Assembly: GCA_002269645.1 (NCBI GenBank)
Contig: NIVC01001751.1
Span: 62,001 to 126,000, forward strand
Length of the DNA: 64,000 nucleotides
Reading direction: 5' to 3'
Source: Macrostomum lignano
Taxonomy: Eukaryota
Part shown: piece by piece, positions 687 through 63,900 of the stretch
Layout of the letters: the number at the start of each line of letters is the position of its first letter
Position numbering within the stretch: the stretch's first letter is position 1
The notes under the pieces: model-generated
The model's input: only the letters and a program-made list of their open reading frames with translations
Database searches by the model: none
What the model was told of the DNA's origin: nothing
Program-made: the position numbers and the translations under genes

Positions 687-1053
687 TTATCAGAGGCAGG
701 GGCTGTGCGCACTCTGGCGCACTTCAAGCGACATTGTCACACAACCGGCGAGAGGCATTGCTGCCCATTCCGCCGACTCCCCTGAGCAGGCACACAAGCG
801 CGCGGATACGTACGCAGTCATACGCACAGGCACACACTCACACAGGAGTGTACAGCGGCCCTAACTTTATTTATCGCTAGGCATGTACACTTCACTGTGC
901 CTTGGGGGTTGGCCCTCAAGCTGGGCGTTAATTGCACGAGCAGAGCCAAGCCGAGATTCCAATTCAGCCCCAAATTCGTGTGACTGCACTTGGAATCGAG
1001 CCTGGGTCGCTGGCACATCAGAGCGCCGCGCCAGACCACTGCACTACGGCTCC
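687..1053 (-). mobile_element. tRNA-derived SINE (family 1, copy 1)
   Basis: The minus strand begins GGAGCCGTAGTGCAGTGG (A-box-like) and later has GGCTCGATTCC (B-box-like). A highly similar ~365-bp copy lies in opposite orientation at 19514-19879, and both copies end at ...CCTGCCTCTGATAA. Confidence 0.8.
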
Positions 1054-1492: not shown

Positions 1493-4179
1493 TTAAGCGC
1501 CGTAGAAGAGCCTGGCAACCGGATAGCGAACGGCAAAGGCGAGCGCAGTGCAGGCGATCTGCAGAGCAAGCAGCAGCCTGGTTAACTTGGCCTCGTGCAT
1601 CGGGCCGAACAGAACCAGAGCGGCGTTGATGAGGGTGAGGTTGGTCATGCTGGCCCGTTCTTCGCCGTCGCGCAGTTCAACTTTGCATGCGACCAGTCGC
1701 AGCGGCGCGAGAATCCTGCTAGCAACCAGGTAGCAAAGCCGGCCGAGCAGGCTGAGCCGGGCGGGACAGAATTCCACCGTGCTCGGCTGCAGCTGATCTT
1801 TGGCCGGGTCGAATCTGCATCAATTATTTTGGTTTTGTTGCCAGTCTGGACTGAATAAAGGTGTGCATTTGAGCCATTTTGATCGCTCAAATCCTTGATT
1901 TATAAAATTAAATTTATAAAACTTAAATTTATAAAGCCCTCAGGTTGCTAGGATAGAAATACCGGTTGCTAGAATGCAAATACCGGTTGCTAGAATGGAA
2001 ATAGCGGTTCCTTTGGTGGAAATACCGGTTGCTAGAATTGAAATACCGGTTGCTGGGTGGAAATACCGGTTGCTAGGATGGAAATACCGGTTGCTGGGGT
2101 GGAAATACCGGTTGCTGGGGTGGAAATACCGGTTACTAGAATGGAAATACCGGGTGCTAGAATGGAAATACCGGTGGCTAGAATGGAAATACCGGTTGCT
2201 ATGATGAAAATACCCCGGTTGGTAGGATGGAAATACTGGTTGCTAGAATGGAAATATCGGTAGCTAACATGGAAATACCGGTTGCTAGGATGGAAATACC
2301 GGTTGCTAGAATGGAAATACCGGTTGCTAGAATGAAAATATCGGTTGCTAGATTGGAAATGCCGGTTGCTAACATGGAAATACCGCGTTGCTAGAATGGA
2401 AATACTGGTTGCTAGAATGGAAATACCGGTTCCTTTGGTGGAAATACCGGTTGCTAGGATGAAAATACCGGTTGCTAGGATGAAAATACCGGTTAGTAGG
2501 ATGAAAATACCGGTTGCTAGAATGGAAATACCGGTTGCTAGAATGAAAATATCTGTTGCTAACATGGAAATACCGGTTGCTAGGATAGAAATACCGGTTG
2601 CTAACATGGAAATACCGGTTGCTAGGATAGAAATACCGGTTGCTAATATGGAAATAACGGTTGCTAGAATAAAAATATATCGGTTGCTAACATGGAAAAA
2701 CCGGTTGCTAGGATGGAAATACCGGTTGCTAGGATGGAAATACCGGTTGCTAGAATGGAAATACCAGTTGCTAGGATGAAAATACCGGTTGCTAGGATGA
2801 AAATACCGGTTGCTAGGATGAAAATACCGGTTAGTAGGATGAAAATACCGGTTGCTAGAATGGAAATACCGGTTGCTAGAATGAAAATATCTGTTGCTAA
2901 CATGGAAATACCGGTTGCTAGGATAGAAATACCGGTTGCTAACATGGAAATACCGGTTGCTAGGATAGAAATACCGGTTGCTAATATGGAAATAACGGTT
3001 GCTAGAATAAAAATAGATCGGTTGCTAACATGGAAAAACCGGTTGCTAGGATGGAAATACCGGTTGCTAGAATGGAAATACCAGTTGCTATGATGAAAAT
3101 ATCGGTAGCTAACATGGAAATACTGGTTGCTAGAATGGAAATATCGGTAGCTAACGTGGAAATACCGGTTGCTAGAATAATAGAAACCTAAGTTTCCAGG
3201 ATGGTTGGAAATTCCGGTTGCTCTTGAGCAAAGCACCGGTTATGACAGATTGAAGCAAAGCCGAGACTAACCTGGGCAGGCGGTGCCTCGGACACGGCAC
3301 CAGGCGGAACAGCTGCGGTATTGACAGGGCAAAATTGGCCACCTGAGGCAGCTGGAACAGCAGCAAAGTCTTGCTGTAGTGCCCGAGAATGCCAGCAACG
3401 GCGAACAGCATGCCGGAGAAATAGCAGAATGTATCGCCAACAAACACTTGGGCCGGGTAGCGATTGAATCTGTACAGCGCGGCGCACACACCAACATAGG
3501 GCAGCAGCAGGTGCAGCGACAGCCGGTGCCAGTAGGCGAACTCGCCGCCAGCCTCGAGAGCGTTGAAAACAACGAGGGAGCCGGCAATCAGCAAGCTCTG
3601 GCCGGATTCCAGGCCGTTAACTCCGGCATAGATATTAATAGCATTAGTGCAGAATACGGCCAGCATGCCCATGTAGGCGTAGTACAGCGGCCCAAGCTCG
3701 CAGCTCTCAACGCCTAGCAGAGGCCGAAGCGGTAGAGGCACAACAACCCGAGTCCAGCCACGATTGACATAATACACCATCAACAGAGGCAGGGAGGCCA
3801 CGCAGGGTAGTACTAGTTTTACTAGCCAGCGCAGATTCAATGCGTCATCGGCGAAGCCTAGAAATAGCATGCAACAGACGCAGAGCAATGCGGTGATGAA
3901 TAGTACAAAATCGGCGTGCGGAAAATCCACAGGATTGTTTAGCATAGCGTCGGCGAATGGCAGCGGAATGAAGGCGAAAAGCAGGCAGAGATACACTGCG
4001 CCGGCCAGCACACCCTGCGCTTCCGGAATCACCCGGCCGTCCTTCTTGGCCATGTCCCGGCCAGACAGGCCGGCGTCCAGGAACAGCTGACGGCAGCGGG
4101 GCATCAGCCAGGTCAGGCTGGCGAATCCGACGGCGCACAGGCCGGCTGAGACGCCAATCAGCCAATCGGAGTAGGCCAT
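1493..4179 (-). CDS. DPAGT1: UDP-GlcNAc:dolichyl-phosphate GlcNAc-1-phosphate transferase; exons 4179-3272 and 1814-1493 (409 aa)
   Basis: Motifs include FLGFADD, FCTNAINIYAGVNGLE, YPAQVFVGDTFCYFSG, CPRHRLPR and C-terminal NLTLIN...GPMHE...RY...RLFY. A phase-2 GT-AG intron (donor AG|GTTAGT at 3271, acceptor TGCAG|A at 1815) joins PR to FDPAKD in frame. AATAAA overlaps the stop codon. Confidence 0.96.
1942..3223. repeat. 21-bp minisatellite (GAAATACCGGTTGCTAGAATG) filling the DPAGT1 intron
   Basis: About 60 tandem units. Variant units recur 338 bp apart (TTAGTAGG at 2493 and 2831; ATCTGTTGCT at 2551 and 2889), indicating a higher-order duplication. Confidence 0.97.
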
Positions 4180-4199
4180 GAACAATCAACGGCAGAGTG

Positions 4200-7800: not shown

Positions 7801-8739
7801 CCTCTAGTATTTTTTTAAAAAAACGAATGAGTATGAATAGGCTTAGATTTCCTAGAATAAATGTTTCACTAGCCGAAATTCTCTTAGCCATCTCTTAGAC
7901 TTAGCAATTAGCATAATTAGAAAAAAATAACTTAAATTCAGCTAGTAAGTATCCCACTAATGAAAAACGAGAAAGAAAGTAAATAGCTAGGTTCTTCTAG
8001 CAGCTCTTGCTGCAGATTATTTAGCAGTCTTCGAAGATTGATCAAATAGCTGGTGAGCTGGCTGGAGGAGTAAAAATGTAGTAGTAGTAGTAATTTGGCT
8101 CAGGCAAGAAGCCTGTTTGGCCAGTATATGTCAGTGTATTTAATATTAATATTATTTCGATAGCAGGGGCGGATTTAAGGGGGGGGGCGGGGGGGGCGGC
8201 CGCCCCCCCCCCCAAAAGTTTGGTCATGGGTTTATGGCGCCCCCCACTGACGCCCACACCGCCCACATGAAAGGATTCAACCAGGTCCCCAAAGCCTGAC
8301 ATCTCCTGCGCGACCCCCTTTCCGTCATTGGCCCACCCCATATAAAGATTTTCAGCGCCCGCCCCTCCCTCCCAACCAAGACTAGACAGAAGACAGCAGA
8401 GGGTAATAAAATTGTTTTTGCAGGAAATCTAACACTCGTATCAATATGTACGGCCAGAGGACCCAAAGTCTGAGTGCTGAATCACTGCCACACTCCTAGC
8501 TCACAAGTTCTTAACGTACATGCACCCCGCCCCAGTAAGCTAGCATATAGCACTAATGTACTGTCACCCGCCAGGATCCAGACAATGATTAAACCGAATA
8601 TAAGAGGACAACACTGGAGTCTCGGATCATTAAGACAGACACCGGTAGAGAAAAATAAACGTGCCTACAGCTTCAAAAGCAACTGACAGTCACGGTCTTT
8701 ATATTACTGTATATTTAAGCCGCTTCAGGCCTTCAGTAA

Positions 8740-17093: not shown

Positions 17094-29102
<12,009 letters not shown>

Positions 29103-32400: not shown

Positions 32401-35400
32401 GTTTAGTTTTGAGCCTGCAAAAAAACAATTTTACAATGTGATTCCTCAATTCGCAGAATCAAAAAATTTAGGAATTTGTGTCTATAATTAAAAATTTCTA
32501 GGGCCCGAAAAAAGGCTACTCCTCACTCCCACCTGCTCATCACCCTGGAATACAAATCTGGAATCTCATCCCTATTGAAACACAGGCCGCTAGCTGGTAA
32601 ATTGCTAGCAAAGCATCTTGAATCCCACGCCTTAGCGTATAACCCTTGGAATATTTCCCAATGCAAGACTCAAACACCATTGACTCAGACACCATAGACT
32701 CAGACACCATAGACTCAGACACCATAGACTCAGACACCATAGACTCAGACACCATAGACTCAGACACCATAGACTCAGACACCATAGACTCAGACACCAT
32801 AGACTCAGACACCATAGACTCAGACACCATAGACTCAGACACCATAGACTCAGACACCATAGACTCAGACACCATAGACTCAGACACCATAGACTCAGAC
32901 ACCATAGACTCAGACACCATAGACTCAGACACCATAGACTCAGACACCATAGACTCAGACACCATAGACTCAGACACCATAGACTCAGACACCATAGACT
33001 CAGACACCATAGACTCAGACACCATAGACTCAGACACCATAGACTCAGACACCATAGACTCAGACACCATAGACTCAGACACCATAGACTCAGACACCAT
33101 AGACTCAGACACCATAGACTCAGACACCATAGACTCAGACACCATAGACTCAGACACCATAGACTCAGACACCATAGACTCAGACACCATAGACTCAGAC
33201 ACCATAGACTCAGACACCATAGACTCAGACACCATAGACTCAGACACCATAGACTCAGACACCATAGACTCAGACACCATAGACTCAGACACCATAGACT
33301 CAGACACCATAGACTCAGACACCATAGACTCAGACACCATAGACTCAGACACCATAGACTCAGACACCATAGACTCAGACACCATAGACTCAGACACCAG
33401 ACCACAATGGCCAGTCCAGCTCACCTTGAACTCATCCAGCAAAGCGAATACGCACGCAGGCAGCCAACCCTGTTAAACGCCGCCACAGCCTACGACGGAC
33501 CGGAGCTGGTCAGCGTGACGCAGGCCTCGATTCTCTGCCTTGACTCTGCCGGAGCCAACCTCAGCTGCACAGGGGTGCCAGCGCCCAGTCTGGATAAAAC
33601 CGACTGCGTCAATGTGCTGAGCGAGGTTCGAATTGATTTTTGGCTGCTGTGTGACCGCATGGTCCCGCACTCCTGTTTATCATGGCTAATTCCGCTCCTT
33701 TCAATTTCCGCCCCTACTTCTAATTTCTGCCCCTTACTTCCAATTTCCGCCCCCTACTTTCAATTTCCGCCCCTACTTTCAATTTCCGCCCCTACTTTCA
33801 ATTTCCGCCCTGCGAATTTCCCTTTCCGCCCACCCTAACTTCACTTTCCGCCCTCTACTTTCACTTTCCGCCCACCCTAACTTCACTTTCCACCCCCTAC
33901 TTTCAATTTCCGCCCCCTAATTTCACTTTCCGCCCACCCTAACTTCACTTTTTGCTGCCCCCTTCCCCTACGGAAATCGCCGAAATTGGCCGGGGGTTGC
34001 CAAGCGATTCAGAGCCATGAGGGCCAACCCCCCCCCCCAGGCACAGAGACTGTACATACCTGACGATTAGAAAGTCAGGGCTGATGTACACCCTGTGTGA
34101 GCGTGTGCATGAGTGCGTGCCTGCGTACAGCGTACAGTATTGTCAGTTTGTAAGTATAGAATGCTGCAGACATGCCCCAGGGTGCCCGCAGCCCTCCTTA
34201 CGCTGATCTTCATTCAGACTGAAGAACCAGTTCTAAATTGGCAATAAAATCCGCTACACTGCAGCTGAGGTACAACATTATCTACACCCACGGCAGCGGA
34301 ATCACGGAGGTCACCTATGACGCGGTGCTTCGAACAATTCCCGTCGACACGGCCGTTCTGCAGAAGTTTCAGTTGAGCTATAATTTTGTGAGTTGACAAT
34401 TGCAGAATCATGAGTATCCAGCATTAAAGTATATAGCATATTTTTGTCCAATATTTTGCCAGCCAATGAGTAGCAATTCACGAGCTTCTCATGACTCATG
34501 ACTTCCGCTATCTACTGTACCCTCGCCTCAGCTACCCTCTCAGCTATCCTCGCCTCAGCTACCCTCTCAGCTACCCTCGCCTCAGCTACCCTCTCAGCTA
34601 CCTTCTCCTCAGCTATCCTCGCCTCAGCTACCTTCTCCTCAGCTACCCTCGCCTCAGCTACCCTCGCCTCAGCTACTCTCTCAGCTACCTTCTCCTCAGC
34701 TACCCTCGCCTCAGCTACCCTCGCCTCAGCTACTCTCTCAGCTACCTTCTCCTCAACTACCCTCTCCTCAGCTACCCTTCCCCAGATATCACACCCCTGA
34801 GCTACAATACCCTTAAGCTACCGCACTCCTAAGCTACCGCACCCCTAATCTACCGCACCCCTAAGCTACCGCACCCCTAAGCTACCGCACCCCTAAGCTA
34901 CCGCACCCCTAAGCTACCGCACCCCTAAGCTACCGCACCCCTAAGCTACCGCACCCCTAAGCTACCGCACCCCTAAGCTACCGCACCCCTAAGCTACCGC
35001 ACCCCTAAGCTACCGCACCCCTAAGCTACCGCACCCCTAAGCTACCGCACCCCTAAGCTACCGCACCCCTAAGGTACCGCACCCCTAAGCTACCGCACCC
35101 CTAAGCTACCGCACCCCTAAGCTACCGCACCCCTAAGCTACCGCACCCCTAAGCTACCGCACCCCTAAGCTACCGCACCCCTAAGCTACCGCACCCCTAA
35201 GCTACCGCACCCCTAAGCTACCGCACCCCTAAGCTACCGCACCCCTAAGCTACCGCACCCCTAAGCTACCGCACCCCTAAGCTACCGCACCCCTAAGCTA
35301 CCGCACCCCTAAGCTACCGCACCCCTAAGCTACCGCACCCTTAAGCTACCGCACCCCTAAGCTACCGCACCCCTAAGCTACCGCACCCCTAAGCTACCGC

Positions 35401-37490
35401 ACCCCTAAGCTACCGCACCACTAAGCTACCGCACCCCTAAGCTACCCTCCCAGCTTAGCAGCTTCAAGCAGCCATGAGCGCCAGCACCCATCGCTGAACC
35501 GCAGAGTGGCAGCGCTTCGGCTGACCTATTTGCCAGAAGCGGAAATCCGGGCTACCTGACCGGCCAGCCGCTCCTTGCCGGAGTGGCAAATTCCACATCT
35601 CGGACAGTCGGCCCGGTGTCCGGCCCGGACCGTTGGCGCCTCAACCTGCCGCCGGTGGATGCCAACGGCGCCTGCAACGACGCTGCCGTGGGCAGCTCGG
35701 TGGGCCAGGCGGTGCTGTTCGGGGAGAACATCCGGGCCAGCTGCCGGCGGACCCTGTCCTGGAATGCCACCAGAAACCAGCTGATCAGCTCGTGCAGCTC
35801 GGTGAATTCCGCAATCCAGCGCTCTCTGATCGGCCTGGGCTTCGGCGGCAACATCTCCCTGGCCGCGTTCGGCAACGCCAGCGCCGCCAACTCCAGCGAC
35901 TGGCTGACGGTCAGCGTGGATCCGACATCGTGCGTGCAGCCCAGCCCGGGCCAGGCGGCCACGGCCTGCACCAACATGATCCTGGGCGGCCGGCTGGAGC
36001 TGCTGATGGCCCGGGCTGGCTCGCTGTCCAATGCGCAGAGCAAACTGGTGGCCGCCAGACTGTCCTGCGATGTTGGCACGATCGCGTTTCCGGCAAGTAC
36101 CTCGCTTTGATGGCCTGGGTCGGGGTCCGCTAGCAGTTTATTGTCTAAGGTTTCACTACTGATTTTGAGACATGGTGCCACCCGCTGAAGGTGACGAAAG
36201 CGTCGGAGTGATGTCGGAATGCTTGAGAGACTACTTGCGGGTAACCCAGCAGTTGAGGCTTGCCCATTGTCGAGGTTTGATCAGAGACATCAGTGAAATT
36301 CCTAATAGGGTATCCATAGTCACCTATATAGTCCACCTGGATGAAGGCCAGTGATCAACAAAGTCAGACCTGATGCAGACATACAGTATGTGGTCGACGT
36401 GCTGATGAAATTTGGAGGCTCGGCGCAGTGCTGATTGGCGCACAGGGGTGTATTCAATACACCAGCGCTTGTATGAAAAATCCGACCTGTTGAATATCTC
36501 GACGTTTCAGAGGTCTAGCGACTTAATTCTTGTTTGAGAAGGTGCTCAACAAAAATTAAGCCCGTGTTCTGAAATTTCGTGTGCCTGCGTTGCTCCGTTC
36601 AGGCGCAGCAAAAAAATTTCAGAGGGATCCCCCTTTAGTAGTTCCACTGCTAATATTGGTTCCGCCTAGGTGAAGGATCAACGCGTAGAAACTGAGGGTC
36701 CACCGCGGGTACCTCAATTTCGGACGAATGATCGACTCAGCTGTAGGGGGTTCCGGGCATCCGGATACAGCGGGGAGGCGTCGCCGCCCATTCCGCTAAT
36801 CCCTGGCGACCGTGGGCAGCTGGTGCTGCGGTGTCGCGCACGCAGATCCGGTGGTTCCGTTTTTTGCAGCGCGGTCCCCTCCGGGAGAGTCCAGAAGGTG
36901 GATGGTCGCTCGCCCGGTAGCCTTAAGGTAGCAGACGAGCTGGCAGAGGTTCTCGTGCCTGAAAAAAATCGGAGAGGTCCGGGTTTGGGCCGAGATAGGC
37001 GAGCCTGTCCTGAGTAAAGGCGAGATATTCGCAGATGAAGTCTTCCGCATTCTCGACACCCTGATGTTTCTGCGGTTGACTAATGAGAATTGACTGGGTA
37101 ATGAATTAAAGGTAATTGTAATTAAGGAGCTAACTATCCGGAATTCAACCGAATAGGCTTCCATTCGAAGGGATTCTGTTGATTTAGCTATAAACTTCTA
37201 ATTCGCCGACCACCCTGTCCGTCGTGCAGTGCGCCGCCGGGTCCTGCACCGCCGTCAGCGACGCCAGCACAATCAACTTTCTAACCTCCTACACCGTGTC
37301 CTTCATCGATGTCACTGGCGAATCGCTTGAAGGCGCTAAGCAGCGCCCAGTGTACCTGCTCCGGCTGCCCACCGACTTCTTCTATCCGCTCTACACCAGC
37401 CGCGGCGGCCGGGTGGCAGGCGGCTCGATCTCCATGCCGCTGTGTCTGCTGCTCCTGCTACTGCTGGTGCCTCCCAGCCCCGTGGCCTGA
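29449..37490 (+). CDS. TCTN1: Tectonic-family transition-zone protein (co-ortholog of TCTN1-3), 9 exons (~604 aa): 29449-29521, 30329-30452, 30549-30655, 30749-30897, 31664-31887, 33460-33625, 34265-34387, 35505-36092, 37230-37490
   Basis: Signal peptide MMVSSWIALFILSSVLCGVLS followed by the Cys motif CTCDLTSNACDTNCCCDPDC. Further motifs are FFCVYFD, DCVNVLSE.LRY, SGNPGYLTGQPLLAG, VLFGENIRASC, AAFGNA and VSFIDVT..LPTDFFYPL, with a hydrophobic tail. Splice phases are consistent (1815 nt). Confidence 0.92.
30930..31640. repeat. 36-bp/18-bp minisatellite (CCCTCCAGTGCTGAGTCTAACCCTCCAGTACTA) in a Tectonic intron
   Basis: Blocks of 36-mers flank a central block of 18-mers. Confidence 0.95.
32668..33398. 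repeat. Perfect 15-bp array (ACTCAGACACCATAG) x ~48 in a Tectonic intron
   Basis: No interior variants seen. It explains the IDSDT, SESMV and WCLSL ORFs. Confidence 0.99.
33690..33960. repeat. ~20-bp C-rich degenerate array (TTTCAATTTCCGCCCCCTAC)
   Basis: Direct reading. Confidence 0.88.
34000..34205 (+). mobile_element. Headless fragment of a second SINE family sharing the central domain and terminus of SINE family 1
   Basis: GAGGGCCAACCCC..GCACAGAGACTGTACATACCTGACGATTAGAAAGTCAGGGCTGATGTACACCCTGTGTGAG aligns with 19648-19730. The end CCAGGGTGCCCGCAGCCCTCC resembles 19847-19870. Confidence 0.6.
34515..35445. repeat. Two adjacent arrays: degenerate CTCAGCTACCCTC(G) (34515-34790) and near-perfect 16-mer TAAGCTACCGCACCCC x ~39 (34810-35445)
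   Basis: Direct reading. Both arrays share the AGCTACC core. Confidence 0.96.
36735..37085 (-). mobile_element. Diverged 3' fragment of a LOA/R1-like LINE inside the last Tectonic intron
   Basis: Translates ENAEDFICEYLAFTQDRLAYLGPNP and LVCYLKATGRA, matching EDAQHFVCHCPFFNRDRLRYLGPNP and LIQFLRATRRA of the 55.7-61.5 kb LINE. It has the same 3' UTR hairpin and a CCTACAGCTGAGTC tail. Confidence 0.78.
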
Positions 37491-54647: not shown

Positions 54648-55826
54648 TATTATATATTCTAAACAAACTTAACTGTATCCTTTTTTACTTTATTTGTTAA
54701 TAATTAATATTCTTAAGCCTATTTAATGCAGAGCTCAATGCAGGATTTCTTACACTAAGTTAAAATTAAGTTCTTAAGCCTAGGCTTATTCAATGTGGAA
54801 TTCAATGTGGGATCCAATATGGGATTTCCTATACCTCACTGAAGCTTAGACCCTATTCAATCCAGAATTCAATATTGAAACTTACACCAGAGAATGAGGC
54901 AGTTTAACTAGTAGTAGTACATTTGATAATCAGCAGAATTTTAGCCCTTTGACTATAGGTATACCCAACATTATATATAATGAGCTTCCTTTTAATAAAT
55001 GCATATACTATGTCTTGATTTGTATACATTTATAATCAATGTTATTGTATCTCATAGTTTAGAAGGCAACATATATGCTAGGATTTCCCAGTGTACAATA
55101 AGGGTGCTAGTTATGTAGCAGCTGCTATTTTAGTTTCAAAATTAGTGAATTTAGTGCCACTAAATATGAAATTCACTAAAATTCAAAACTTCCTAAAAAA
55201 CATGAAAAAAGATTTATTTTTACTGTTTCTTTTCCTTAGTTAAAGCAGTGTGAAAATTAAAAAGATTCTACTTTATATTTAATAAAATAAAACCCAAATT
55301 AGTTAAAATTTGTCAAATTGAAAAAAGTTAACTGTTGTACTTATATACTGCACAAAGCCAAAGGATAAGGTAAGGTAACCGGTATAGTAATATTAACACT
55401 AACAGACAGTAGTACCATAGTAAGTTTAGTAACTTCACTTAGTAAGTTGCCATTGCCAGTCGCCAAGTTGGTTACCATTGCCAGTCGGTGGTCAGTAAGG
55501 GTAATTGGGCATTCTTTTGTTTTACAATCACTTAGCACTGTCCCTATGGGAGTTGGGACTTTCGTTATACAACCCCCCCCACAGAGGATGGCAAAATTGC
55601 TCTTAAAATCAAACTTCAAAATGGGACCAATTTCAAGCGCATCATTTTAACATCAAATCTTGTGTCTTATAGAAGTTAGAAGCTTGTCCTTATATTCACT
55701 TTCGTTATATGATCTTGACTTACTTTGACTTAGCTGCAGGGTGGTCCGTAGACACAGCGGGGAGGCGAGGGTCGCCCATTCCGCTAGCCCCTGAAGGCCC
55801 GCAGACAGGCAGAGGCGTGGGGCCGG

Positions 55827-58800
55827 TCAGGGTGGTCCGCCGGTCCGTCCTGCAGCGTGATCTTCTGTTGGGAAGAAACTGGCTCGTCTAGTCGCCCGAA
55901 GGAACTGGATGAGCCGTGGGATGCTGTCGGGCTGGCAAACCTCGTCAATGGACGGGTTCGGCCCGAGGTAGCGTAGCCGGTCTCTGTTAAAGAAAGGGCA
56001 GTGACAGACAAAGTGCTGAGCATCTTCATTGTCGCACTCGCAAAAGGGGCAAATTTCGCTCTCGAGGTCGCCTCGGAGGAAGCAGTGCCTGGCGAGGTAG
56101 CCATGGCCGGTAAGGGTCATGACAAGGGCTCGAATATCCTTCCGATTCTGGTTCAGAAGGATGTTTCTGAGCCTGTGAGACGGGCAAGGAACTGCGGCAC
56201 GAGATTGCCGGCAGTTTTGGGTGCCCGCCCATCTGTCCCTGTGGAGGGAGTCAGCCCAGTCGTCGATCTGACGATTGATGACTGTCAAGGGCATAGGGAC
56301 CAGGGGGGCAGGGCCGAAAAAAGAGCCAGAGCCGCCCCTCTTGGCGAGGGTGTCTGCCAGCTCGTTCCCCGGAAACCCTGCGTGCCCTGGGATCCACTTC
56401 AGCCTGACAGTATTGCTTCTGGCCAGGAGGTTGAGCTGCCGGGCGCAGTCGGCGACTGTCCGGGAGTTCGTTGTGGTGTGGCAAAGGGCCTGTAAGGCCG
56501 CTTGGCTGTCGGAGTGGATGACAATAGTCTTTCCTCTCGTAACCTTGGCGTTTAGCTCTGCAGCGCAAGAGCTGATGGCAAGGACTTCGTTCTGGAAGAC
56601 TGTGGAGAGTCTACCAGTGTGCTGGGCATGCGTGGCAATTACGCGGCCGTTGATGATGATGCAGACCCCAAAGCCGGCGCGACCGTCTTTGATGGATCCG
56701 TCCGTGTAGCAATGGACCTCCTGGAAATTCCAGTGGTCATTGGCAGCATCCCTAGAGGGGATGGTGACCTTGTAGCGCTGAAAGAGGTTGAGAGTGCGGG
56801 GTTCGCCGTCAGATAGGACGTGGAGCCCGCCGCTGTCTCTCAAGTCCTTGAGGCAGAGGTCAGCGTGGGGCAGAAGCTTGCGCTTAGCCATGGCCCTATG
56901 GGGCTGGATTCGAATGCCAGCGTCAGCTAGACGGCGGGCAGTCTTAGCCGCTTCCCTGCGGACAAAGATGTCCAGCGGAGGAATGTTGAGGAAGGCGTTG
57001 AGGCCATCGTAAGGAGCAGACGGAGGGGCGCTCATGATCGTGCGACAAGCGCGCCCTTGCGCTCTCCTGAGAGCCTCTAGACAGGTCTTTATCTGCAGGG
57101 CGCTAGCCCAGATCAGGCCGCCATACGAGATAGCGGGCCTAACCATTGCAGTGTAGATCCACCAGAGGCGCTTGGGGTGAGCCCCCAGGTGGTGCCGACG
57201 GCCCTGCGCAATTGCGCGAGGACTGCGAAGGCCTTTTTGGCTTTTGTTTGAACGTGGGGAGACCAGTTCAGCCTGTGGTCCAGGGTAATACCCAGACATT
57301 TAGTCTGCTTGCAGAAGGGGATTTCCCTTCCGTAAAGCGTGAGCGGCCGAATCTGCCACTTGGTCCTGCTGGTGAACATGATCGCTGCGGTCTTAGTCTC
57401 AGAGAGCCTTAAACCACAGCGGTCCGCCCATTGCTCAGCAGCGTAGATGAAGTTCTGAAGAAGGTCCCTGAGGGTATCAGGGGACGGACCAGATGCCACC
57501 GCGGTGACATCGTCCGCATATCCAACTTTCAGAATGGGGTCAGGCCGAACATCCCGGAGGAGCTCATCGATGACCATATTCCAGAGAACTGGAGACAGCA
57601 CCCCACCTTGCGGGCTACCTTTGCAGACGGGGACCGTCCTCTGGTAGCCCAGCAGACTGGCGGTGGCCGTGCGATGGCTGATCATGTACATGATCCATCT
57701 GGTGAGATGTGAGTGCGTTAGCCTCTCACAAAGAGCTCTTCGGAACGCCTCAAAGAGGACGTTATCGAAGGCGCCAATGATGTCCAGGAAGATCCCCAGA
57801 GCAAAGCCACTACCAAGCACGGCCTTCTCGAGTTTATCGACCAGGACGTGCAGCGCGCTTTCAGTGGAGCGACCCGCCCGAAAAGCGTGCTGGTTCTCGC
57901 TGAGAGGTTTGTTCTTCAGCTCAACAGAGAGAAGGCGCCAAAGCACCAGTCTCTCCATCAGCTTGACCAGGGAGGAGGTCAAGCTGATCGGTCTGAAGGA
58001 TTTGATAGAATGGTAGTCCGGGCGGCCTGGCTTAGGGATAAAGATCACCTTTGCCTCGGTCCATGCCTGCGGGACATAACCAAGCGTGATGCATGCCCGA
58101 AGAAGGCTGCAAAGTTTGCGCAGGAAGCCTGGGCATTTAACCGCCTCTCTTAGAAGGGCCGGTACAATGCCGTCGGGTCCTGGGGCTTTGAAAGGCTTGA
58201 AGGAATTTGCCGCTCTCACAATGCGGTCCTCCGTGATGATAGATGCAGCCAGCGCGTGACCTCCCTCCGAGTGATCCGGAGTGGTCTGGTTAGCTGGCTC
58301 GTTAGGGAAAAACGCAGTGAGCATTACATCAAGCGTTTCCCCTGGGTTGTCCGTGGACGTACCGTCGGTGCGTTTGACCGAGGAGAGCTTAGACATTTTG
58401 TCCAGCGTGAGCGCTTTCACAACTCTGGAGGTGGGGTGTGAGCCCTCTAGCTCCTCACAGTATTGTCGCCATTTTTGAGCCTTTGCATTCCTAACCTGCC
58501 TTTTAAACTCATGAATTGCTTCATGATAGGCGGTTTGGTCTGCAGGGCTCTTAGTTTTAGTTGCTCTGCGGTGGAGTCTCTTAGCCCTGCGACGGAGGTT
58601 GCCGAGCTCGGGATTCCACCACGGCGCCGATTTTTTCCCTTTATAGGCTTTTAAAGGGCAGGACGCCTCAAAGGCGGCGGTTAGCGTCTCTGTCAAAACA
58701 GTCGCGCACTCATCCGCCTCTCGGCACGACGTGATCGTGGATGGTTGGCCAGGAGACCGATGGAATTCCTTCAGGGCGAGCCCAAAGGTTTCCCAATCCG

Positions 58801-59530
58801 TATTTCTGGCGTTCCGTCTCCACGTAACACGAGTTGCGCTACGCGCGGCCATTAGGTTGAAGGAGATGAACTTGTGATCCGATAGTGAGGACACTGGAAG
58901 CACCCGCCACGCCCCAATACTCTGGTAGAGTCTGGGCGTTGCGAGCGTAGCGTCGATCACCTCCGACCACCGTCCGTTGTCAAAGGTAGGGGTGGACCCA
59001 GAGTTGCAGAACTCGAGGGTCGTAGAGGCAACGTAGGCTAGGAGGTCTTCGCCTCTCTGATTAATGCCAGTGCTGCCCCAGTGAGTGTGGTGGGCGTTGA
59101 TGTCGCCGGCAACCATGAGCTCGTAGTTTTTGGCAGAGCAGAGCTCTACCAGCGTAGCGAGGGCTCTGGGGACGACCGCAGCATCGCCTGGTAGGTAAAC
59201 CGAGGCAATGAGGGTGGTCTTCCCAGGAAGAAGGTCCTCGGATTGGATGACGCAGATGTCCCTGTTGGACAGGTCCGATCTGAGCCACGCACTGAGCGTT
59301 TTGCTCGCAAAGATGCAAGCTCTGGGAGGCTGGTTGGCCTCGCGAGGGTAAGTATAAAAACAATTGTAGCCAGCAGGGGCGTTTTGAGGCTTACCTCTGA
59401 GAGTCCAGGGTTCCTGGACGAGGATGAGCCCCGGCTTGTCGAGCTCGGCGTAACGCATAAGGTTGACCGAGGCTGCGACGCAGTGCTGCAGATTAATCTG
59501 CAGGCAATGGATTCCCTGGTTGCTGATCAT
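55827..59530 (-). CDS. LINE ORF2: APE endonuclease, RT, RNase H and CCHC knuckle, with a single 1-nt frameshift at the G4 run 57174-57177
   Basis: Motifs are QINLQH, VQEPW, GDINAH, TFD, IDAT, SDH (APE); KAPGPDG, FRPISL, QHAFRAG, DIIGAFD, GSPQGGVLSP, YADD (RT); YTDGS, EVLAI, SDSQAAL, WIPGH, GNELAD (RNase H); and CPFC..HFVCHC. Adding one C restores WGLTPKRLWW. Confidence 0.9.
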
Positions 59531-60998
59531 TATCACGCAGTTGGGGAATCGTTGAGCAGGTCATCTCCTCCTTTTCAGTGGTGGGTGACCCGCAGACCTC
59601 CATGGGAGTTTCAGCGTCCTCAGCAGTTAGGGTGGCTGTGGAGTCCTCCGCGGACGTGAGCCCAGCGTGGACGTTACCGTCGCCTCTCCTGCGTGCTTCG
59701 GTGCTGTCACTGCCCGTCCCCTCTGCCTCGTCGGTCAGGTCGATGCGGGTGGCGCCAGCCTCCTGGTGAGTCACAGACTCGAACCAGTCGGTCGGAGCCT
59801 CCCCGCTTAGAGTCTGGCCTTCTGGCTGTTGGGGTAGAGCGCGAGAAGCGCGGGCCCGCTCACGATGCGCACGAAGGTTCTTGGCCTGGTCCAGCGCGCG
59901 CTGGATCAGGCCGGACCTCCGGGTGCTCCTGGCGGGTCTGCGATTGCGATTTCCGGTTTCAGCAGCGCGAACTGCCTTACCGGGCATAGGATCGGCCGTT
60001 TGCCTCGGCTTCTTTGCCGGAGGAGCCTGGGCCCCAGTTCCGGTTTCGGAAGCTTTGGCATTCTTGGCTTCATCAGCTTTCCGCTCCTCGCAACGGAGGA
60101 TGGTCAGCTGAGTCAGACCAATATGAATTGTGGACTTAGGCGGCAAGCGCTTAGCCCAGTCATCAGAGAGCCCTAGGATCACCGTAGCCCCCTTCTCCTT
60201 GCGGGAAGTGGCGTGGTGTAGGAGCCCGTTGACCTTAAGGTCGGGGTGCAGCTTTAGCAATATTTGCCTAAGCTGATCTCCGGACTTAATGGCACTGCCG
60301 GCCGGGATCCAGACGCAAAAGCGCTGGGTCTTCTGTCGTTCGCCCTCGCTGGCGAAGACGAGCTTGCCGAGCTTCTTGGGCCAGTTCAGCTTTGGCAGAA
60401 GCTCGCGTAGATTGCGGCTGCTCTCCTCCGAGCTGCACCAGATGAAGATGCAGCCGTCGGTCTTGGCAGACTTGACCACGCTCACAGGGCGGCCCGCCAG
60501 GAGCTGGTCGATGAGCGCAGCATCGATGGTGCGCCAGGCACTGTCGAGCTCGTCGGCCGTGAGGTCCTGCTCTTCCCCGAAGACGATGACCGCCGGTTGG
60601 AGCTTGACCTTTGAGGCGTAGTTGGTGGCGGCGGTTCCCGAAGGCCCGGCCGCGCTTGTAGCAGGTATACTGGGTGGCACACCAGCGGGGGTTGTATCCT
60701 GGGGGGCAGGGGTTGCTGTGGTTCCTTTCGGCCCAACAGCAGCCTCGCCCTCCCTAGGTTCCCCTTCCGCCGGTGGCCGGCCCGCAGTACCCCGTAGTCG
60801 CCGTCGCCGCTCGTTGCGGCGTTGGTTGCGGGTGCGTCGGGCTTCAGCGGAGGGCCCGGTTGCGCGTGCGGGCATGTCACCAGCCGAGCCGGCGGCAAGC
60901 CCATCTGCCCCCGGTGGGGCGGCGCTGGTGCCAGAGTCACCGGCCGGAGTTGCCGGGGCCCCGGCTTCAGCGGGGGTTAAAGAGGCGGATGACGCCAT
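59493..60998 (-). CDS. LINE ORF1 (501 aa), DUF4780-like nucleic-acid-binding protein
   Basis: Intact ORF upstream of and slightly overlapping ORF2. It has an Arg-rich patch, NYASKV and a GCIFIWC..LNW..VWIP..GATVILGL pattern recalled from LOA-type ORF1s. No CCHC knuckle. Confidence 0.8.
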   Translation of the reverse strand: MASSASLTPAEAGAPATPAGDSGTSAAPPGADGLAAGSAGDMPARATGPSAEARRTRNQRRNERRRRLRGTAGRPPAEGEPREGEAAVGPKGTTATPAPQDTTPAGVPPSIPATSAAGPSGTAATNYASKVKLQPAVIVFGEEQDLTADELDSAWRTIDAALIDQLLAGRPVSVVKSAKTDGCIFIWCSSEESSRNLRELLPKLNWPKKLGKLVFASEGERQKTQRFCVWIPAGSAIKSGDQLRQILLKLHPDLKVNGLLHHATSRKEKGATVILGLSDDWAKRLPPKSTIHIGLTQLTILRCEERKADEAKNAKASETGTGAQAPPAKKPRQTADPMPGKAVRAAETGNRNRRPARSTRRSGLIQRALDQAKNLRAHRERARASRALPQQPEGQTLSGEAPTDWFESVTHQEAGATRIDLTDEAEGTGSDSTEARRRGDGNVHAGLTSAEDSTATLTAEDAETPMEVCGSPTTEKEEMTCSTIPQLRDNDQQPGNPLPAD

Positions 60999-63900
60999 AG
61001 CTGAAAGCGGGAAGGAGTGAGCTGAGTCACAAAAGAAAGAGGAAAGAAGAAAAAGAAAAGGACCGCTAGCGACCGGACAACCCCCCGGCCTTCCAGCCCA
61101 TCGGCACGGTCAAACACCTTAGGCATTAGGGGGTACGTTAAGCAGTACCACGGCCTGCAGGCTGGCAAGCCAGACCCGCATACCCAAATTCGGCCGAAGC
61201 CACTGGATGGGTCGCCAGCGTCGGAGCCCAGTCTGTCCAGCAGCCCTAGGGTCTGCCTTGAACACACGCGGGGACGAGTACCCTGGGTCGACTTGTGAAA
61301 CAGCGTGAGGGGGGGTCTGCGGCTGCCAGTGGCAAATAGCGGGTGCAGACCTCCCTCTCCAGCCTTGACCTGCTGAATATAGGGGCAGGCGTGAAGCATC
61401 GCAGACCGTAGCCCTTAGGCCTGGTCTGTCTCATACTTCACTGGCGTGCTGAATACACCTTCGCGTGCCATTATATGATCATTTAAATGGTGAATTTATA
61501 TGCAAATGATTGCAAGACAAAACCAAAAGAGCTTGTAGGTTTTGAATTACGATCACTGCATTAGTAGAATTGTATTGAAGGGATTGTATGATGAAAGTGA
61601 ATGGATTGCTACGTATATTAACTGATTAATATATTAACTGATCATCGTCACTCTACGGACTGTATCTTAAAACTGTATTTGTTATAAACTCGCATGCCAC
61701 GTCCCCCCTCTCACTTTTGTCATACGATCACCCCTTGGTATAACACATAGGTCCAATGAACTGGGGGGATCGTAAGACAAAAGTGAGGGGGGCCGCGCGC
61801 CCAAAAAGGTTGTAATATAGTTTGAGTAAAAAAGCACTTCTCATGTGCACCACAGGGACTCGGCTTTCTGCCCGCGGACATATATCGTAGAGGCTAGCTG
61901 CAATTGATTGTTTAGTTGAAACAACGTCTATTATAGCAACAACTTCCTACTATTTCGTCATACAATTCCTCCAATACAATTTTAACATTAATGTGATTGT
62001 AATTCGAAACTTACAAGATCTTTTGGTTTCGTCTTGCAATCATCTACATATAATTTTACCATTTAAATGATCGCATGACGAAAGTGAATATAAGCTACGT
62101 GCTTTCATAACTATGCTATGCCCACTGCACGATCCTCAAGTTGACTGAAAAGTGAGTTGCAGTGATGAATTAGGTTGACTGGAAAGTGAGTTGCAATGAT
62201 TTTGTTCTTGAAATATAAATGTGAAACATACTTTTTGATAAACTATAGTGTCTCTTCGACTCTTTTTTAATAGGGATCGTAAGACAAAACTTGACCTGCT
62301 CAGGGATCATAAAATGAAAGAATACCGGTAATTGATATGACTATTTAAATTCTACTATCAGAATTGATTGAATTACTGATTTATGGAATTGTATTATACT
62401 TAGGGCACTTGCAATTAAATCAATTGAATAAATGAAAAATTAAAATGAAAATTTATAGATTTTTTAGGAGATAAAATAATTATTCAGACAAAAAACAAAC
62501 AGCAAGAACAACAGCAGCAAAAAATGAGACAAGTAGCAAAAACAAAAAAGAAAAGTTAGACTCATCACTTATCAGTTATCAGTCATCACTATTGTCTATC
62601 AGGCATCAGCATAAGTCTATGATCTATCTATGAGTCCTATGACTATCAGTATGACTGACTATCAATTTATTTTATTTCTATCCCTATCAGTATGACAATA
62701 TCAGTATAGTATACATGACTTGATTGTAAATTCTAAATACTGTTACATTATGTACATTTAAAAAGATTTAAAAAATTGAAATCAGTAAAACAAAATTGTT
62801 TAAAAGACTGAGAACCCTAAAAAACAATGTAAAAAATTAGATGCCTAAAATTTAGCAAATTCCAATTTTTAGCAAATTTGAGCAAAATGTAGCAGCACTT
62901 TTGTAGTGTACGCTAAGTCAAAATTCAATTTAGCAATATTAGCAAATTTCAAATTTAGTGCCCGCTATGCCCATCACTAAGTATAAGATAATTGTACTTA
63001 GGAAAATAAATAAAAATGACTGCTTCTTCCACAGACTGCCAAGAAATTTCCCACAATTTGTTAAGTCTGCTATATCTTCCCACTTTTGCTTGTCCAAGAG
63101 CCTTGAAGGCCTTCAACCATGTGCGTATGCAATCCAGATTGGTCAAGTCCAAACTGTCTAGTTGCAATCCTATTGTTGTGACTTAAAAAAGAGTATTTGA
63201 ACTTCCTATTAAACTTTAATTATTTGAGGTTAGGCTTGTAACTGACAGCTGCTTAGAATTGCATTTTATTTTGTACAACAAAGAGAAGGGAGAATACTTT
63301 AGGGTGGGTGTTATTTGATATTATTGAGTATGGTCATAGATAAATGAAGTATTGCACTCACAGACCCAACTATTTTTTCTCTTGTCTCACTTAAAGCACA
63401 TGTATATATCCTCATCTTAAACACAAAATATAGAAACAGAAATATGAGACAACATGAGCATGGAAAATGTGAAGCAGACATCATCAAGTAGCCTTTTAAT
63501 TCCAATCAGAAGCCCAAATTGATAGTAGCTATCTGGATCTACACATTTCACTCTTGATACAGCCTTAGGAGAATCTTACTCAGTGTTCTTGGATCAATAA
63601 GAAGGGATGGATCTTTCTTGTGCAAAGCAGCCATGAGACACTGCTAAAAGGCTTATTTTGTTGCATATAGACACTGGGCAAGTTGCACTGGGCAATTGTT
63701 GCATATTGCCCCCTATTCTAAGGCCTTACTCAGATCTACATCGGATTCTTGATAGCTGTCAGTTTCTGAATTTGAGGAGTCTGAATTAAATGGAAAATTA
63801 TCACCTTCCTCAACTCTTTCCTTAAGTTGATTACCCAATATCCCTTCATGACAACCTGTTCTATTGGGCAAGGATGATGTCATCATTGGAATTATCTCTT

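What the first reader, a model, noticed from the sequence alone, without database searches (positions are those of the whole stretch)
687..1053. tRNA-SINE shares a covarying 3' hairpin with the resident LOA-like LINE (candidate SINE-LINE partnership)
Sense-strand hairpins occur in three different elements. SINE (746-775 rc; also ~19790-19820): CGGCGG-AAT-GGGC-agcaat-GCCT-c-TCGCCG. Full-length LINE 3' UTR (55756-55785 rc): AGCGG-AAT-GGGCGA-ccc-TCGCCT-cc-CCGCT. Diverged LINE fragment (36769-36797 rc): AGCGG-AAT-GGGCG-gcga-CGCCT-cc-CCGCT. The stems and loop change sequence but pairing and the AAU bulge are kept. It is established that SINEs borrowing a LINE 3' tail are mobilised by that LINE's RT. 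The inference is that this hairpin is the ORF2 recognition element, and that this is a SINE partner of an RNase H-bearing LOA/R1-like LINE.
Basis: partly seen in the sequence, partly recalled or inferred. Interest (0 to 1): 0.78.

Follow-up and report, generated by a model that had tools for sequence, protein, structure and literature searches.

The report
Flatworm SINE carrying its LINE's hairpin
A 367-base non-coding mobile element in the flatworm Macrostomum lignano carries, near its 3' end, the same bulged RNA hairpin module that closes the 3' UTR of an RNase H-bearing LINE family. This is the usual signature of a SINE that borrows a LINE's copying enzyme: a sound example, but of a well-known kind.

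Summary
The window is Macrostomum lignano. Two independent copies of a 367-bp SINE lie at 687-1053(-) and 19514-19879(+). A full-length LINE with a 10-bp TSD lies at 55715-61470(-), and a 5'-truncated fragment of a second LINE subfamily lies at 36735-37060(-). All carry the same bulged hairpin.

Six further LINE relatives (39-62% ORF2 identity) were retrieved by protein similarity alone, and all have the hairpin. Across 9 distinct sequences, 97% of cells pair and 7 of 11 pairs show two-sided compensatory changes (0/500 shuffles).

A covariance model built from LINEs only finds the SINE hairpins at E~4e-5. The next hit in the window is E~1.5.

The shared element is larger than reported. A conserved CAGGGG/CCCCUG helix encloses the bulged hairpin and a variable second hairpin.

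- The SINE is closest to the second LINE subfamily, not the resident full-length copy, which has an ORF2 frameshift.
- The AAU bulge becomes UAU or UCU in distant relatives.
- LOA/R1 membership is unsupported, since ORF1 has no zinc knuckles.
- The SINE and LINE 3' termini differ.
- No SINE TSD was found.

Recognition by ORF2p is inferred. This is a new member of a known kind.

The parts
687..1053 (-). SINE copy 1, complete, 367 nt. It begins GGAGCCGUAG and ends ...CCCCUGCCUCUGAUAA, with no poly(A).
   Evidence: Boundaries come from alignment with copy 2 and with the head in L033. It is present at 99.5-99.7% identity in three homeologous or allelic M. lignano loci, L031-L033.
1036..1046 (-). 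Pol III A-box-like motif UAGUGCAGUGG, at SINE position +8.
   Evidence: Read from the sequence. The L033 copy has UAGCCCAGUGG, a perfect match to TRGCNNAGTGG.
992..1002 (-). Pol III B-box-like motif GGCUCGAUUCC, at SINE position +52.
   Evidence: Read from the sequence. Differs at one position from GGTTCGANNCC. The spacing matches canonical tRNA positions.
779..784 (-). CAGGGG, the 5' strand of the closing helix P1 in SINE1.
   Evidence: Pairs with CCCCUG in the minimum-free-energy folds and in the RNAalifold consensus.
746..775 (-). Bulged hairpin in SINE1: CGGCGG-AAU-GGGCA-gcaa-UGCCU-c-UCGCCG.
705..722 (-). Second hairpin in SINE1 (GUGCGC-cagagu-GCGCAC). It sits where LINE relatives have a short, variable hairpin.
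   Evidence: Folds. LINE relatives have short hairpins of unrelated sequence at this position.
695..702 (-). CCCCUGCC box in SINE1: the 3' strand of P1 and the conserved terminal box of the LINE family.
19514..19879 (+). SINE copy 2, 366 nt, 94% identical to copy 1. Hairpin at 19789-19818, CAGGGG at 19780-19785, CCCCUGCC at 19864-19871.
   Evidence: Orthologues at L031 2564-2928 and L032 1844-2196.
55715..61470 (-). LINE1, full length (about 5.76 kb). 5' UTR 472 nt. ORF1 at 59493-60998. ORF2 is split by a frameshift into 57113-59536 (APE and RT) and 55827-57299 (RNase H and CCHC). The 3' UTR is about 112 nt and ends (UAAGUCA)n.
   Evidence: Pfam domains. Frameshift located at 57173-57236 by tblastn. 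Ends defined by the TSD.
55705..55714 (-). 3' copy of the LINE1 target-site duplication, GATCATATAA. The 5' copy is at 61471-61480.
55734..55793 (-). LINE1 3' module: CAGGGG (55788-55793), hairpin UAGCGG-AAU-GGGCGA-ccc-UCGCCU-cc-CCGCUG (55755-55786), small hairpin GUC-uacg-GAC, and CCCUGCAG (55734-55741).
36735..37060 (-). 5'-truncated fragment of a second LINE subfamily (LINE2), 83% identical to L001. Hairpin at 36768-36798. The P1 strands are decayed (CAGGGA ... CCCUACAG).
33975..34215 (+). Diverged SINE-like copy. It shares the SINE body and the 3' terminus (...CAGCCCUCCUUACGCUGAU) but lacks the head, the CAGGGG and the bulged hairpin.

Best explanation
The window is from Macrostomum lignano. 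[quoted passage not shown] The 3' ~100 nt of this SINE carry the conserved 3'-UTR RNA module of a resident RNase H-bearing LINE family.

The module is a small three-way junction with three parts:
- a closing helix, CAGGGG/CCCCUG;
- a hairpin with a 6-bp outer stem, a 3-nt 5' bulge (AAU here), a 5-6-bp inner stem that opens with an invariant G.U pair, a 3-8-nt loop and a 1-2-nt 3' bulge;
- a short variable second hairpin.

A few bases and a fast-evolving tail follow. The tail is (UAAGUCA)n, (UAAUC)n or poly(A) in the LINEs and CUCUGAUAA in the SINE.

Proposed mechanism, inferred by analogy with stringent-type LINEs:
1. Pol III transcribes the SINE.
2. ORF2p of the partner LINE normally binds this module in cis on its own mRNA. 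It binds the SINE copy in trans.
3. ORF2p then reverse-transcribes the SINE at a nicked target.

Shown here: homology of the module, its conservation with compensatory changes across the LINE family, and its strand specificity. Inferred: that it is the ORF2p binding site, and that the L001/LINE2-type subfamily is the actual partner.
For: Organism: the DPAGT1 exon at 3172-4185(-) is 100% identical to M. lignano BOX15_Mlig005701g4. Three paralogous loci from GCA_002269645.1 align to the window.

LINE domains: APE, RT and RNase H. LINE1 has a 10-bp TSD.

Relatives found by protein search only all have the module just after the stop codon:
- L001
- L034, 62% identity
- L035, 49%
- L036, 47%, and L037, 45%
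- L038, 39%

Pair counts:
- With the SINE, 9 sequences: 97.0% of cells paired, 7 of 11 pairs changed on both sides, covariation score 0.51 against 0.17 for shuffles, 0/500 shuffles as high. Partners slid by 1-3 columns give 44-64% paired.
- LINEs only: 96.6% paired and 7 of 11 pairs.

The LINE-only covariance model hits the SINE at 28.1 bits, E 4e-5. The next hit in the window is at E 1.5. It also finds L036, which was not used to build it, at 20.1 bits.

The SINE tail against the L001 3' UTR gives local-alignment z 8.4, 0/500 shuffles.

All five stem substitutions between the SINE and L001 preserve pairing: two compensatory pairs, plus one U.G changed to C-G. Randomly placed substitutions do this in 0.3% of trials.

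P1 appears in the minimum-free-energy fold of 8 of the 9 distinct tails. In L001 it costs only 0.9 kcal/mol. RNAalifold recovers it from an unguided alignment.

The invariant G.U pair (9/9) and the frequent U.G and G.U pairs would be A.C mismatches on the other strand, so the structure belongs to the sense RNA.

Literature: stringent-type LINEs need their 3' UTR stem-loop, and SINEs sharing it are mobilised (PMC3747384, PMC4176376).
Against: - No functional test was done.
- The extreme 3' ends differ: the SINE lacks the AAGUCA repeats. In the best-studied stringent pairs the terminal repeat is shared.
- No TSD was found for either SINE copy, so insertion signatures cannot be compared with LINE1's 10-bp TSD.
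- Only two independent full-length SINE insertions were available. No empty site exists in the three paralogous loci.
- A diverged SINE-like copy at 33975-34215 has the same 3' terminus but no bulged hairpin. The module may therefore be a secondary acquisition inside an older SINE tail, or it may have been lost in that copy.
- The pair-count alignment was made by hand, with N padding, to fit the structure. Four of the LINE sequences are close relatives.
- The source organisms of L001 and L034-L038 are unknown.
- The only full-length LINE in the window is frameshifted and is not the closest subfamily.
Confidence: 0.68

Rival explanations
1. The module is homologous but no longer in use. The SINE once took the hairpin from this LINE family, but it now spreads, or last spread, through a different LINE that recognises its distinct 3' terminus (...CUCUGAUAA).
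For: - The SINE terminus is unlike the LINE tail.
- The diverged copy at 33975-34215 keeps the terminus but not the hairpin.
- No SINE TSD is comparable with LINE1's.
- Another, AT-rich RT-bearing element is present at 13286-14542.
Against: - Every stem difference between the SINE and its nearest LINE preserves pairing (p about 0.003). The SINE also has two pair types seen in no LINE. Both points suggest selection on the SINE's own hairpin after it was acquired.
- Tails differ widely within the LINE family itself, from repeats to poly(A), while the module is constant. An identical tail therefore does not appear to be required.
- The 3' region of the other RT element shows no resemblance to the SINE tail.
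Confidence: 0.15
2. The conserved module serves another RNA function, such as stability, 3'-end formation, export or translation control, rather than RT recognition. The SINE benefits from that function.
For: Nothing here addresses protein binding. The module fills almost the whole of a very short (about 100-nt) 3' UTR, so other 3'-UTR functions would have to lie within it.
Against: - A Pol III SINE has no use for mRNA translation or polyadenylation signals. What it shares with the LINE is the need to be reverse-transcribed.
- There are precedents for 3' stem-loops as RT recognition sites in stringent LINEs (PMC4176376, PMC3747384).
Confidence: 0.12
3. The SINE and LINE hairpins resemble each other by chance or by convergence.
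For: The hairpins are short and GC-rich. Single-sequence folding z-scores are weak. Similarity to LINE1 alone is marginal (z 2.1).
Against: - LINE-only covariance model E 4e-5, with a clean gap to the background.
- z 8.4 against L001.
- An exact shared 11-mer, an identical GCAA loop, and both flanking boxes (CAGGGG and CCCCUGC) in the same order.
Confidence: 0.03

Closest known systems
Eel UnaL2/UnaSINE1 and zebrafish ZfL2 (L2 clade): stringent-type 3'-tail recognition (PMC4176376; reviewed in PMC3747384)
   Same: A tRNA-promoter SINE shares the LINE's 3' UTR stem-loop. The stem sequence varies while pairing is kept. ORF2p recognises the stem-loop.
   Different: - A different LINE group: this one has RNase H and belongs to the I/R1-like supergroup.
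- The element here is a bulged two-stem hairpin inside a closing helix, not a simple stem-loop.
- The terminal repeats are not shared between SINE and LINE.
- No experimental evidence exists here.
Bombyx SART1 (R1 clade) 3' UTR stem-loop, required for retrotransposition (as summarised in PMC3747384)
   Same: An APE-type LINE of the I/R1 supergroup that depends on a structured 3' UTR. The APE domain here is closest to TRAS1 EN among solved structures.
   Different: SART1 is telomere-specific, ends in poly(A), has CCHC knuckles in ORF1 and has no known SINE partner.
Meta and V SINEs paired with Nimb LINEs (I superfamily) in bivalves (PMC11481361)
   Same: tRNA-derived SINEs whose 35-61-bp tails are homologous to the 3' end of an I-superfamily LINE. 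They show mosaic evolution, with tails swapped between SINE bodies.
   Different: A different phylum. Those pairs were defined by sequence similarity only. Whether the M. lignano LINE is a Nimb element, and whether the SINE body holds a known central domain, could not be tested here.
Aedes aegypti gecko SINE and the MosquI (I-clade) LINE.
   Same: A tRNA-related SINE whose 3' end resembles that of an RNase H-bearing I-clade LINE.
   Different: An insect host. The tails are short tandem repeats or poly(A). No covarying bulged hairpin has been described, as far as I recall.

Membership tests
Stringent-type SINE/LINE pair (shared 3' tail) | The SINE 3' region is homologous to the 3' UTR of a co-resident LINE. 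| tested here: met
   LINE-only covariance model hits the SINE at 28.1 bits, E 4e-5. Local alignment to the L001-type UTR gives z 8.4. A fragment of that subfamily lies in the window at 36735-37060.
Stringent-type SINE/LINE pair (shared 3' tail) | A conserved stem-loop in the LINE 3' UTR, supported by compensatory changes. | tested here: met
   8 LINE lineages: 96.6% of cells paired, 7 of 11 pairs changed on both sides, 0/500 shuffles.
Stringent-type SINE/LINE pair (shared 3' tail) | Identical terminal repeat or extreme 3' end in SINE and LINE. | tested here: not met
   The SINE ends CCCCUGCCUCUGAUAA. The LINEs end CCCUGCAGCUAAGUCA(AAGUAAGUCA)n. Only the CCCCUGC box and a few further bases align.
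Stringent-type SINE/LINE pair (shared 3' tail) | The same TSD length and target preference in SINE and LINE. | tested here: inconclusive
   LINE1 has a 10-bp TSD, GATCATATAA. No TSD of 6 nt or more, allowing one mismatch, was found at either SINE copy or at the LINE2 fragment. No empty sites were available.
Stringent-type SINE/LINE pair (shared 3' tail) | Trans-mobilisation of the SINE by the LINE's ORF2p, dependent on the tail. | not testable with these tools
   Needs a retrotransposition or binding assay.
tRNA-derived SINE | [quoted passage not shown] | tested here: met
   A box at +8 (UAGUGCAGUGG; UAGCCCAGUGG in L033) and B box at +52 (GGCUCGAUUCC).
tRNA-derived SINE | Detectable tRNA homology or a cloverleaf in the head. 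| tested here: inconclusive
   - No hit with ARAGORN at default settings.
- No tRNA hit in Rfam, even at E up to 10.
- ARAGORN at 80% thresholds reports a 72-nt cloverleaf in register in 2 of 3 heads. The false-positive rate at that setting is 0.8-2%.
- The anticodon loop is 6 nt.
tRNA-derived SINE | Dispersed, multi-copy, with defined ends. | tested here: met
   Two independent full-length copies in 64 kb with the same ends. A separate head fragment in L033. A diverged copy at 33975-34215. Genome-wide copy number was not measurable.
LOA clade LINE | ORF2 with APE, RT and RNase H. | tested here: met
   Pfam Exo_endo_phos_2, RVT_1 and RNase_H. These domains are also shared by the I, Nimb, Ingi/Vingi, Tad1 and Outcast clades.
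LOA clade LINE | The RT domain groups with LOA references in a phylogeny. | not tested
   No reference LINE sequences (Repbase or RTclass1) were available. The database hits carry no clade names.
LOA clade LINE | A gag-like ORF1 with CCHC zinc knuckles. | tested here: not met
   ORF1 (501 aa) has no CCHC motif. Its only Pfam match is a sub-threshold DUF4780 hit, which is strong in the L038 relative.
R1 clade LINE | Site-specific insertion (28S rDNA, or telomeric repeats for SART/TRAS). | tested here: not met
   LINE1 sits in an AT-rich arm of an inverted-repeat element, with a 10-bp TSD.

The most novel reading that the evidence does not exclude
The three-way-junction module consists of the CAGGGG/CCCCUG closing helix and a hairpin with a 3-nt bulge ending in U, next to an invariant G.U pair. 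It may be the clade-wide ORF2p recognition element of a widespread, so far undescribed RNase H-bearing LINE lineage with a knuckle-less, DUF4780-type ORF1. This lineage was found here in M. lignano and in several marine and metagenomic sources. The M. lignano SINE would have captured the module and then maintained it through its own compensatory substitutions. That would make the pair a tractable system, in a transgenesis-capable flatworm, for studying stringent RNA recognition outside the L2 and R1 clades.
Probability: 0.45. Interest if true: 0.5.

Novelty: new member of a known kind. Interest (0 to 1): 0.4.

Why it matters
SINE/LINE pairs that share a structured 3' tail are the main natural evidence for how stringent LINE reverse transcriptases choose their template. 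Experimentally studied cases come from only a few clades.

This pair adds a well-defined example from a flatworm and from an RNase H-bearing LINE lineage. The RNA element is richer than usual: a closing helix, a bulged hairpin and an invariant G.U pair. Its covariation is already visible across eight LINE lineages.

No SINE is mentioned in the M. lignano genome paper (PMC5730564), nor in the other M. lignano TE paper I checked (PMC12801592). M. lignano has working transgenesis (PMC5730564), so stem-breaking and compensatory tests are feasible in the native host. The module also gives an annotation handle for SINEs and truncated LINE tails in a very repeat-rich genome. The principle itself is textbook.

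Tried and rejected
- The metagenome-wide pattern scan CAGGGN{3,7}GCGGAATGGGCN{3,10}GCCTC returned 26 hits. All lie in GC-rich, apparently bacterial contigs with no 3' arm or tail, so they are chance matches.
- A SINE-specific 20-mer in genome contigs gave one chance hit, in Thioalkalivibrio. It gave none in viral contigs.
- The search for related loci with ORF2 C-terminal alignments found no relatives in viral or prokaryotic genome collections.
- Exact look-up of six window ORFs found none in the protein collection. One of the six was mis-specified by me and lacked its Met.
- UniRef M. lignano LINE proteins have no DNA on record.
- Distant relatives with about 30% identity (L002, L029, L030) have AT-rich 3' flanks without the module. 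The element is therefore specific to the family and does not extend to this whole group of LINE relatives.
- MAFFT misaligned the stems. I imposed the structural alignment by N padding. This biases the pair counts towards the structure, which is why the LINE-only covariance-model test and the unguided RNAalifold run are also reported.
- TSD searches for the SINE copies and the LINE2 fragment found nothing.
- Rfam found no tRNA or any other family in the SINE.
- I considered that the SINE might be an internally deleted LINE. This was rejected, because the only similarity to the whole of LINE1 is in the tail.
- I considered the other RT element (13286-14542) as the partner. Its 3' region is unlike the SINE tail.
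- LINE clade assignment could not be resolved. The PDB search shows only that the EN domain is nearer to TRAS1 than to L1.

Full report
**What is at the coordinates.**
The interval 687-1053(-) is one complete copy of a 367-nt non-coding repeat. A second copy lies at 19514-19879(+) and is 94% identical. Both copies end at the same base...CCCCUGCCUCUGAUAA, and neither has a poly(A) tail.

The 5' end carries an A-box-like motif at +8 and a B-box-like motif at +52, which are the canonical tRNA positions. ARAGORN at default settings finds no tRNA, and Rfam finds none even at E up to 10. With ARAGORN thresholds lowered to 80%, two of three heads give a 72-nt cloverleaf in the expected register. At that setting, 0.8-2% of shuffled or random genomic pieces also give a hit. 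The head is therefore plausibly tRNA-derived but degenerate.

**Organism and context.**
The exon at 3172-4185(-) encodes DPAGT1 and is 100% identical to a Macrostomum lignano protein. Three paralogous loci from assembly GCA_002269645.1 align to the window. This fits the duplicated karyotype reported for this species (PMC5730564).

Both SINE insertions are present in those loci. No empty site was therefore available.

**The LINEs.**
LINE1 occupies 55715-61470(-) and is flanked by a 10-bp target-site duplication, GATCATATAA. Its features are:
- a 472-nt 5' UTR;
- an ORF1 without zinc knuckles, whose only Pfam match is a sub-threshold DUF4780 hit;
- an ORF2 with APE, RT, RNase H and a C-terminal CCHC motif, broken by one frameshift near 57173-57236.

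The second hairpin site belongs to a roughly 300-bp, 5'-truncated fragment at 36735-37060(-). This fragment comes from a different subfamily. It is 83% identical to a metagenomic contig, L001, whose ORF2 is 57% identical to that of LINE1.

**Is the hairpin real and shared?**
Folding energies alone are not remarkable.

To get evidence independent of the hairpin, I collected LINE relatives by protein similarity only and then read their 3' flanks. The relatives were L001, L034 (62% ORF2 identity), L035 (49%), L036 (47%), L037 (45%) and L038 (39%). All have the same architecture just after the stop codon.

L035 changes six of the eleven pairs and still pairs throughout. L036-L038 replace AAU with UAU or UCU. 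More distant relatives, at about 30% identity, lack the element.

Pair counts were made on a hand-made, N-padded alignment:

| Measure | 9 hairpins (with SINE) | 8 LINEs only |
|---|---|---|
| Cells paired | 97.0% | 96.6% |
| Pairs changed on both sides | 7 of 11 | 7 of 11 |
| Shuffles reaching the observed values | 0/500 | 0/500 (3/500 for further pair types) |
| Cells paired with partners slid 1-3 columns | 44-64% | 44-63% |

The first pair of the inner stem is G.U in all nine sequences.

**SINE membership.**
A covariance model built from five LINE hairpins only finds LINE1, LINE2 and both SINE copies in a filter-free scan of the window. The SINE copies score 28.1 bits (rough E 4e-5), and nothing else scores above 11.6 bits. 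The model also recovers L036, which was not used to build it.

By plain local alignment, the SINE tail is significantly similar to the L001-type 3' UTR (z 8.4, 0/500). It is only marginally similar to LINE1's (z 2.1, 20/500). The likely source and partner is therefore the second subfamily.

Between the SINE and L001, the loop (GCAA) and the bulge (AAU) are identical. The five stem substitutions form two compensatory pairs plus one U.G changed to C-G. Random placement of five substitutions preserves all pairs in 0.3% of trials. The SINE also shows two pair types seen in no LINE.

**A larger module than reported.**
The conserved CAGGGG lies just upstream of the hairpin. It pairs with the conserved CCCCUG box a few bases before the tail. 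This helix appears in the minimum-free-energy folds of 8 of 9 distinct tails, including both SINE copies. In L001 it costs only 0.9 kcal/mol. RNAalifold recovers it from an unguided MAFFT alignment.

Between the bulged hairpin and the CCCCUG box, most sequences have a second short hairpin of unrelated sequence. The SINE has a longer one.

Downstream, the tails diverge: (UAAGUCA)n, (UAAUC)n or poly(A) in the LINEs and CUCUGAUAA in the SINE. The constant part is therefore the structured module, not the terminus.

**What argues for caution.**
- The SINE and LINE termini are not the same.
- No TSD was found for either SINE copy.
- Only two independent full-length SINE insertions could be examined.
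- A diverged SINE-like copy at 33975-34215 keeps the SINE body and terminus but lacks CAGGGG and the bulged hairpin. The module may have been inserted into an older SINE tail, or lost from that copy.
- The clade label 'LOA/R1-like' is unsupported. RNase H occurs in several clades, ORF1 lacks CCHC knuckles, the element is not site-specific, and no reference phylogeny was possible. The only pointer is that the endonuclease domain matches TRAS1 EN (R1 clade) better than L1 EN among solved structures.

**Comparison with what is known.**
This is the classical stringent-type arrangement of a SINE that shares its LINE's 3' stem-loop (PMC3747384, PMC4176376). Partnerships between tRNA-derived SINEs and I-superfamily (Nimb) LINEs are already described in bivalves (PMC11481361).

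I found no description of SINEs in M. lignano. The genome paper does not mention them, and the other searches found nothing relevant.

**Verdict.**
The finding is a new member of a known kind. Its interest is moderate, and lies mainly in a clean, covariation-supported and experimentally tractable RNA element.

Noticed in passing
window 8079-15168: About 7 kb is present in the window but absent from all three paralogous M. lignano loci (L031-L033). It contains a hAT-type transposase ORF (8740-11946, with DUF4371 and a hAT dimerisation domain, after a long Ala/Pro-rich repeat) and an AT-rich RT fragment (13286-14542, minus strand). It is probably a haplotype- or subgenome-specific insertion.
   Followed up: partly
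window 61477-61596 and 61953-62072: These form 120-bp inverted repeats (84% identity). LINE1 is inserted into one arm, and its TSD GATCATATAA lies inside that arm. The host sequence looks like a foldback or MITE-like element.
   Followed up: partly
L033 15171-15273 (minus strand): A SINE head (91% identity, perfect A box) runs for only about 100 nt and then continues into unrelated sequence. This is either a second SINE family with the same head or a truncated or rearranged copy.
   Followed up: no
window 33975-34215 (+), preceded by 33780-33960: An older SINE-like copy shares the SINE body (77% identity) and 3' terminus but lacks the LINE-type hairpin. It abuts a short-period satellite (CTTTCCGCCC-like units). 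The shared central part might be a conserved SINE core domain. I could not compare it with the known Meta, V, CORE, Deu or Nin domains.
   Followed up: partly
window about 1943-3180: The DPAGT1 intron or downstream region holds a long tandem array, seen as a ladder of self-matches at roughly 21-bp offsets. The array differs in length between the window and L031-L033.
   Followed up: no
window 20058-21221, 22535-23413, 32540-33442, 49515-50909: Several long open frames are artefacts of short-period tandem repeats. They translate as repeating peptides such as CLSV, MVSES and LINQGLLH. They are satellites, not genes.
   Followed up: no
SINE1 orthologues: L032 12157-12190 and L031 13154-13184: The otherwise 99.5%-identical paralogous copies of SINE1 each carry a private mutation inside the hairpin: a C-to-U change in one and a 1-nt deletion in the other. 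This is as expected for neutral decay after insertion.
   Followed up: yes
L038 (NCBI GCA_024206455.1, labelled as a Gammaproteobacteria MAG): A complete eukaryotic LINE (DUF4780 ORF1, then APE-RT-RNase H ORF2, then the 3' module with a (TAATC)n tail) sits on a contig deposited as part of a bacterial MAG. This is probably eukaryotic contamination of the bin.
   Followed up: no
window 26673-28151(-) and 38850-39629(-): Two ORFs encode highly charged, low-complexity proteins (Lys/Asp/Glu-rich) with no Pfam match. They may be host genes and were not examined.
   Followed up: no
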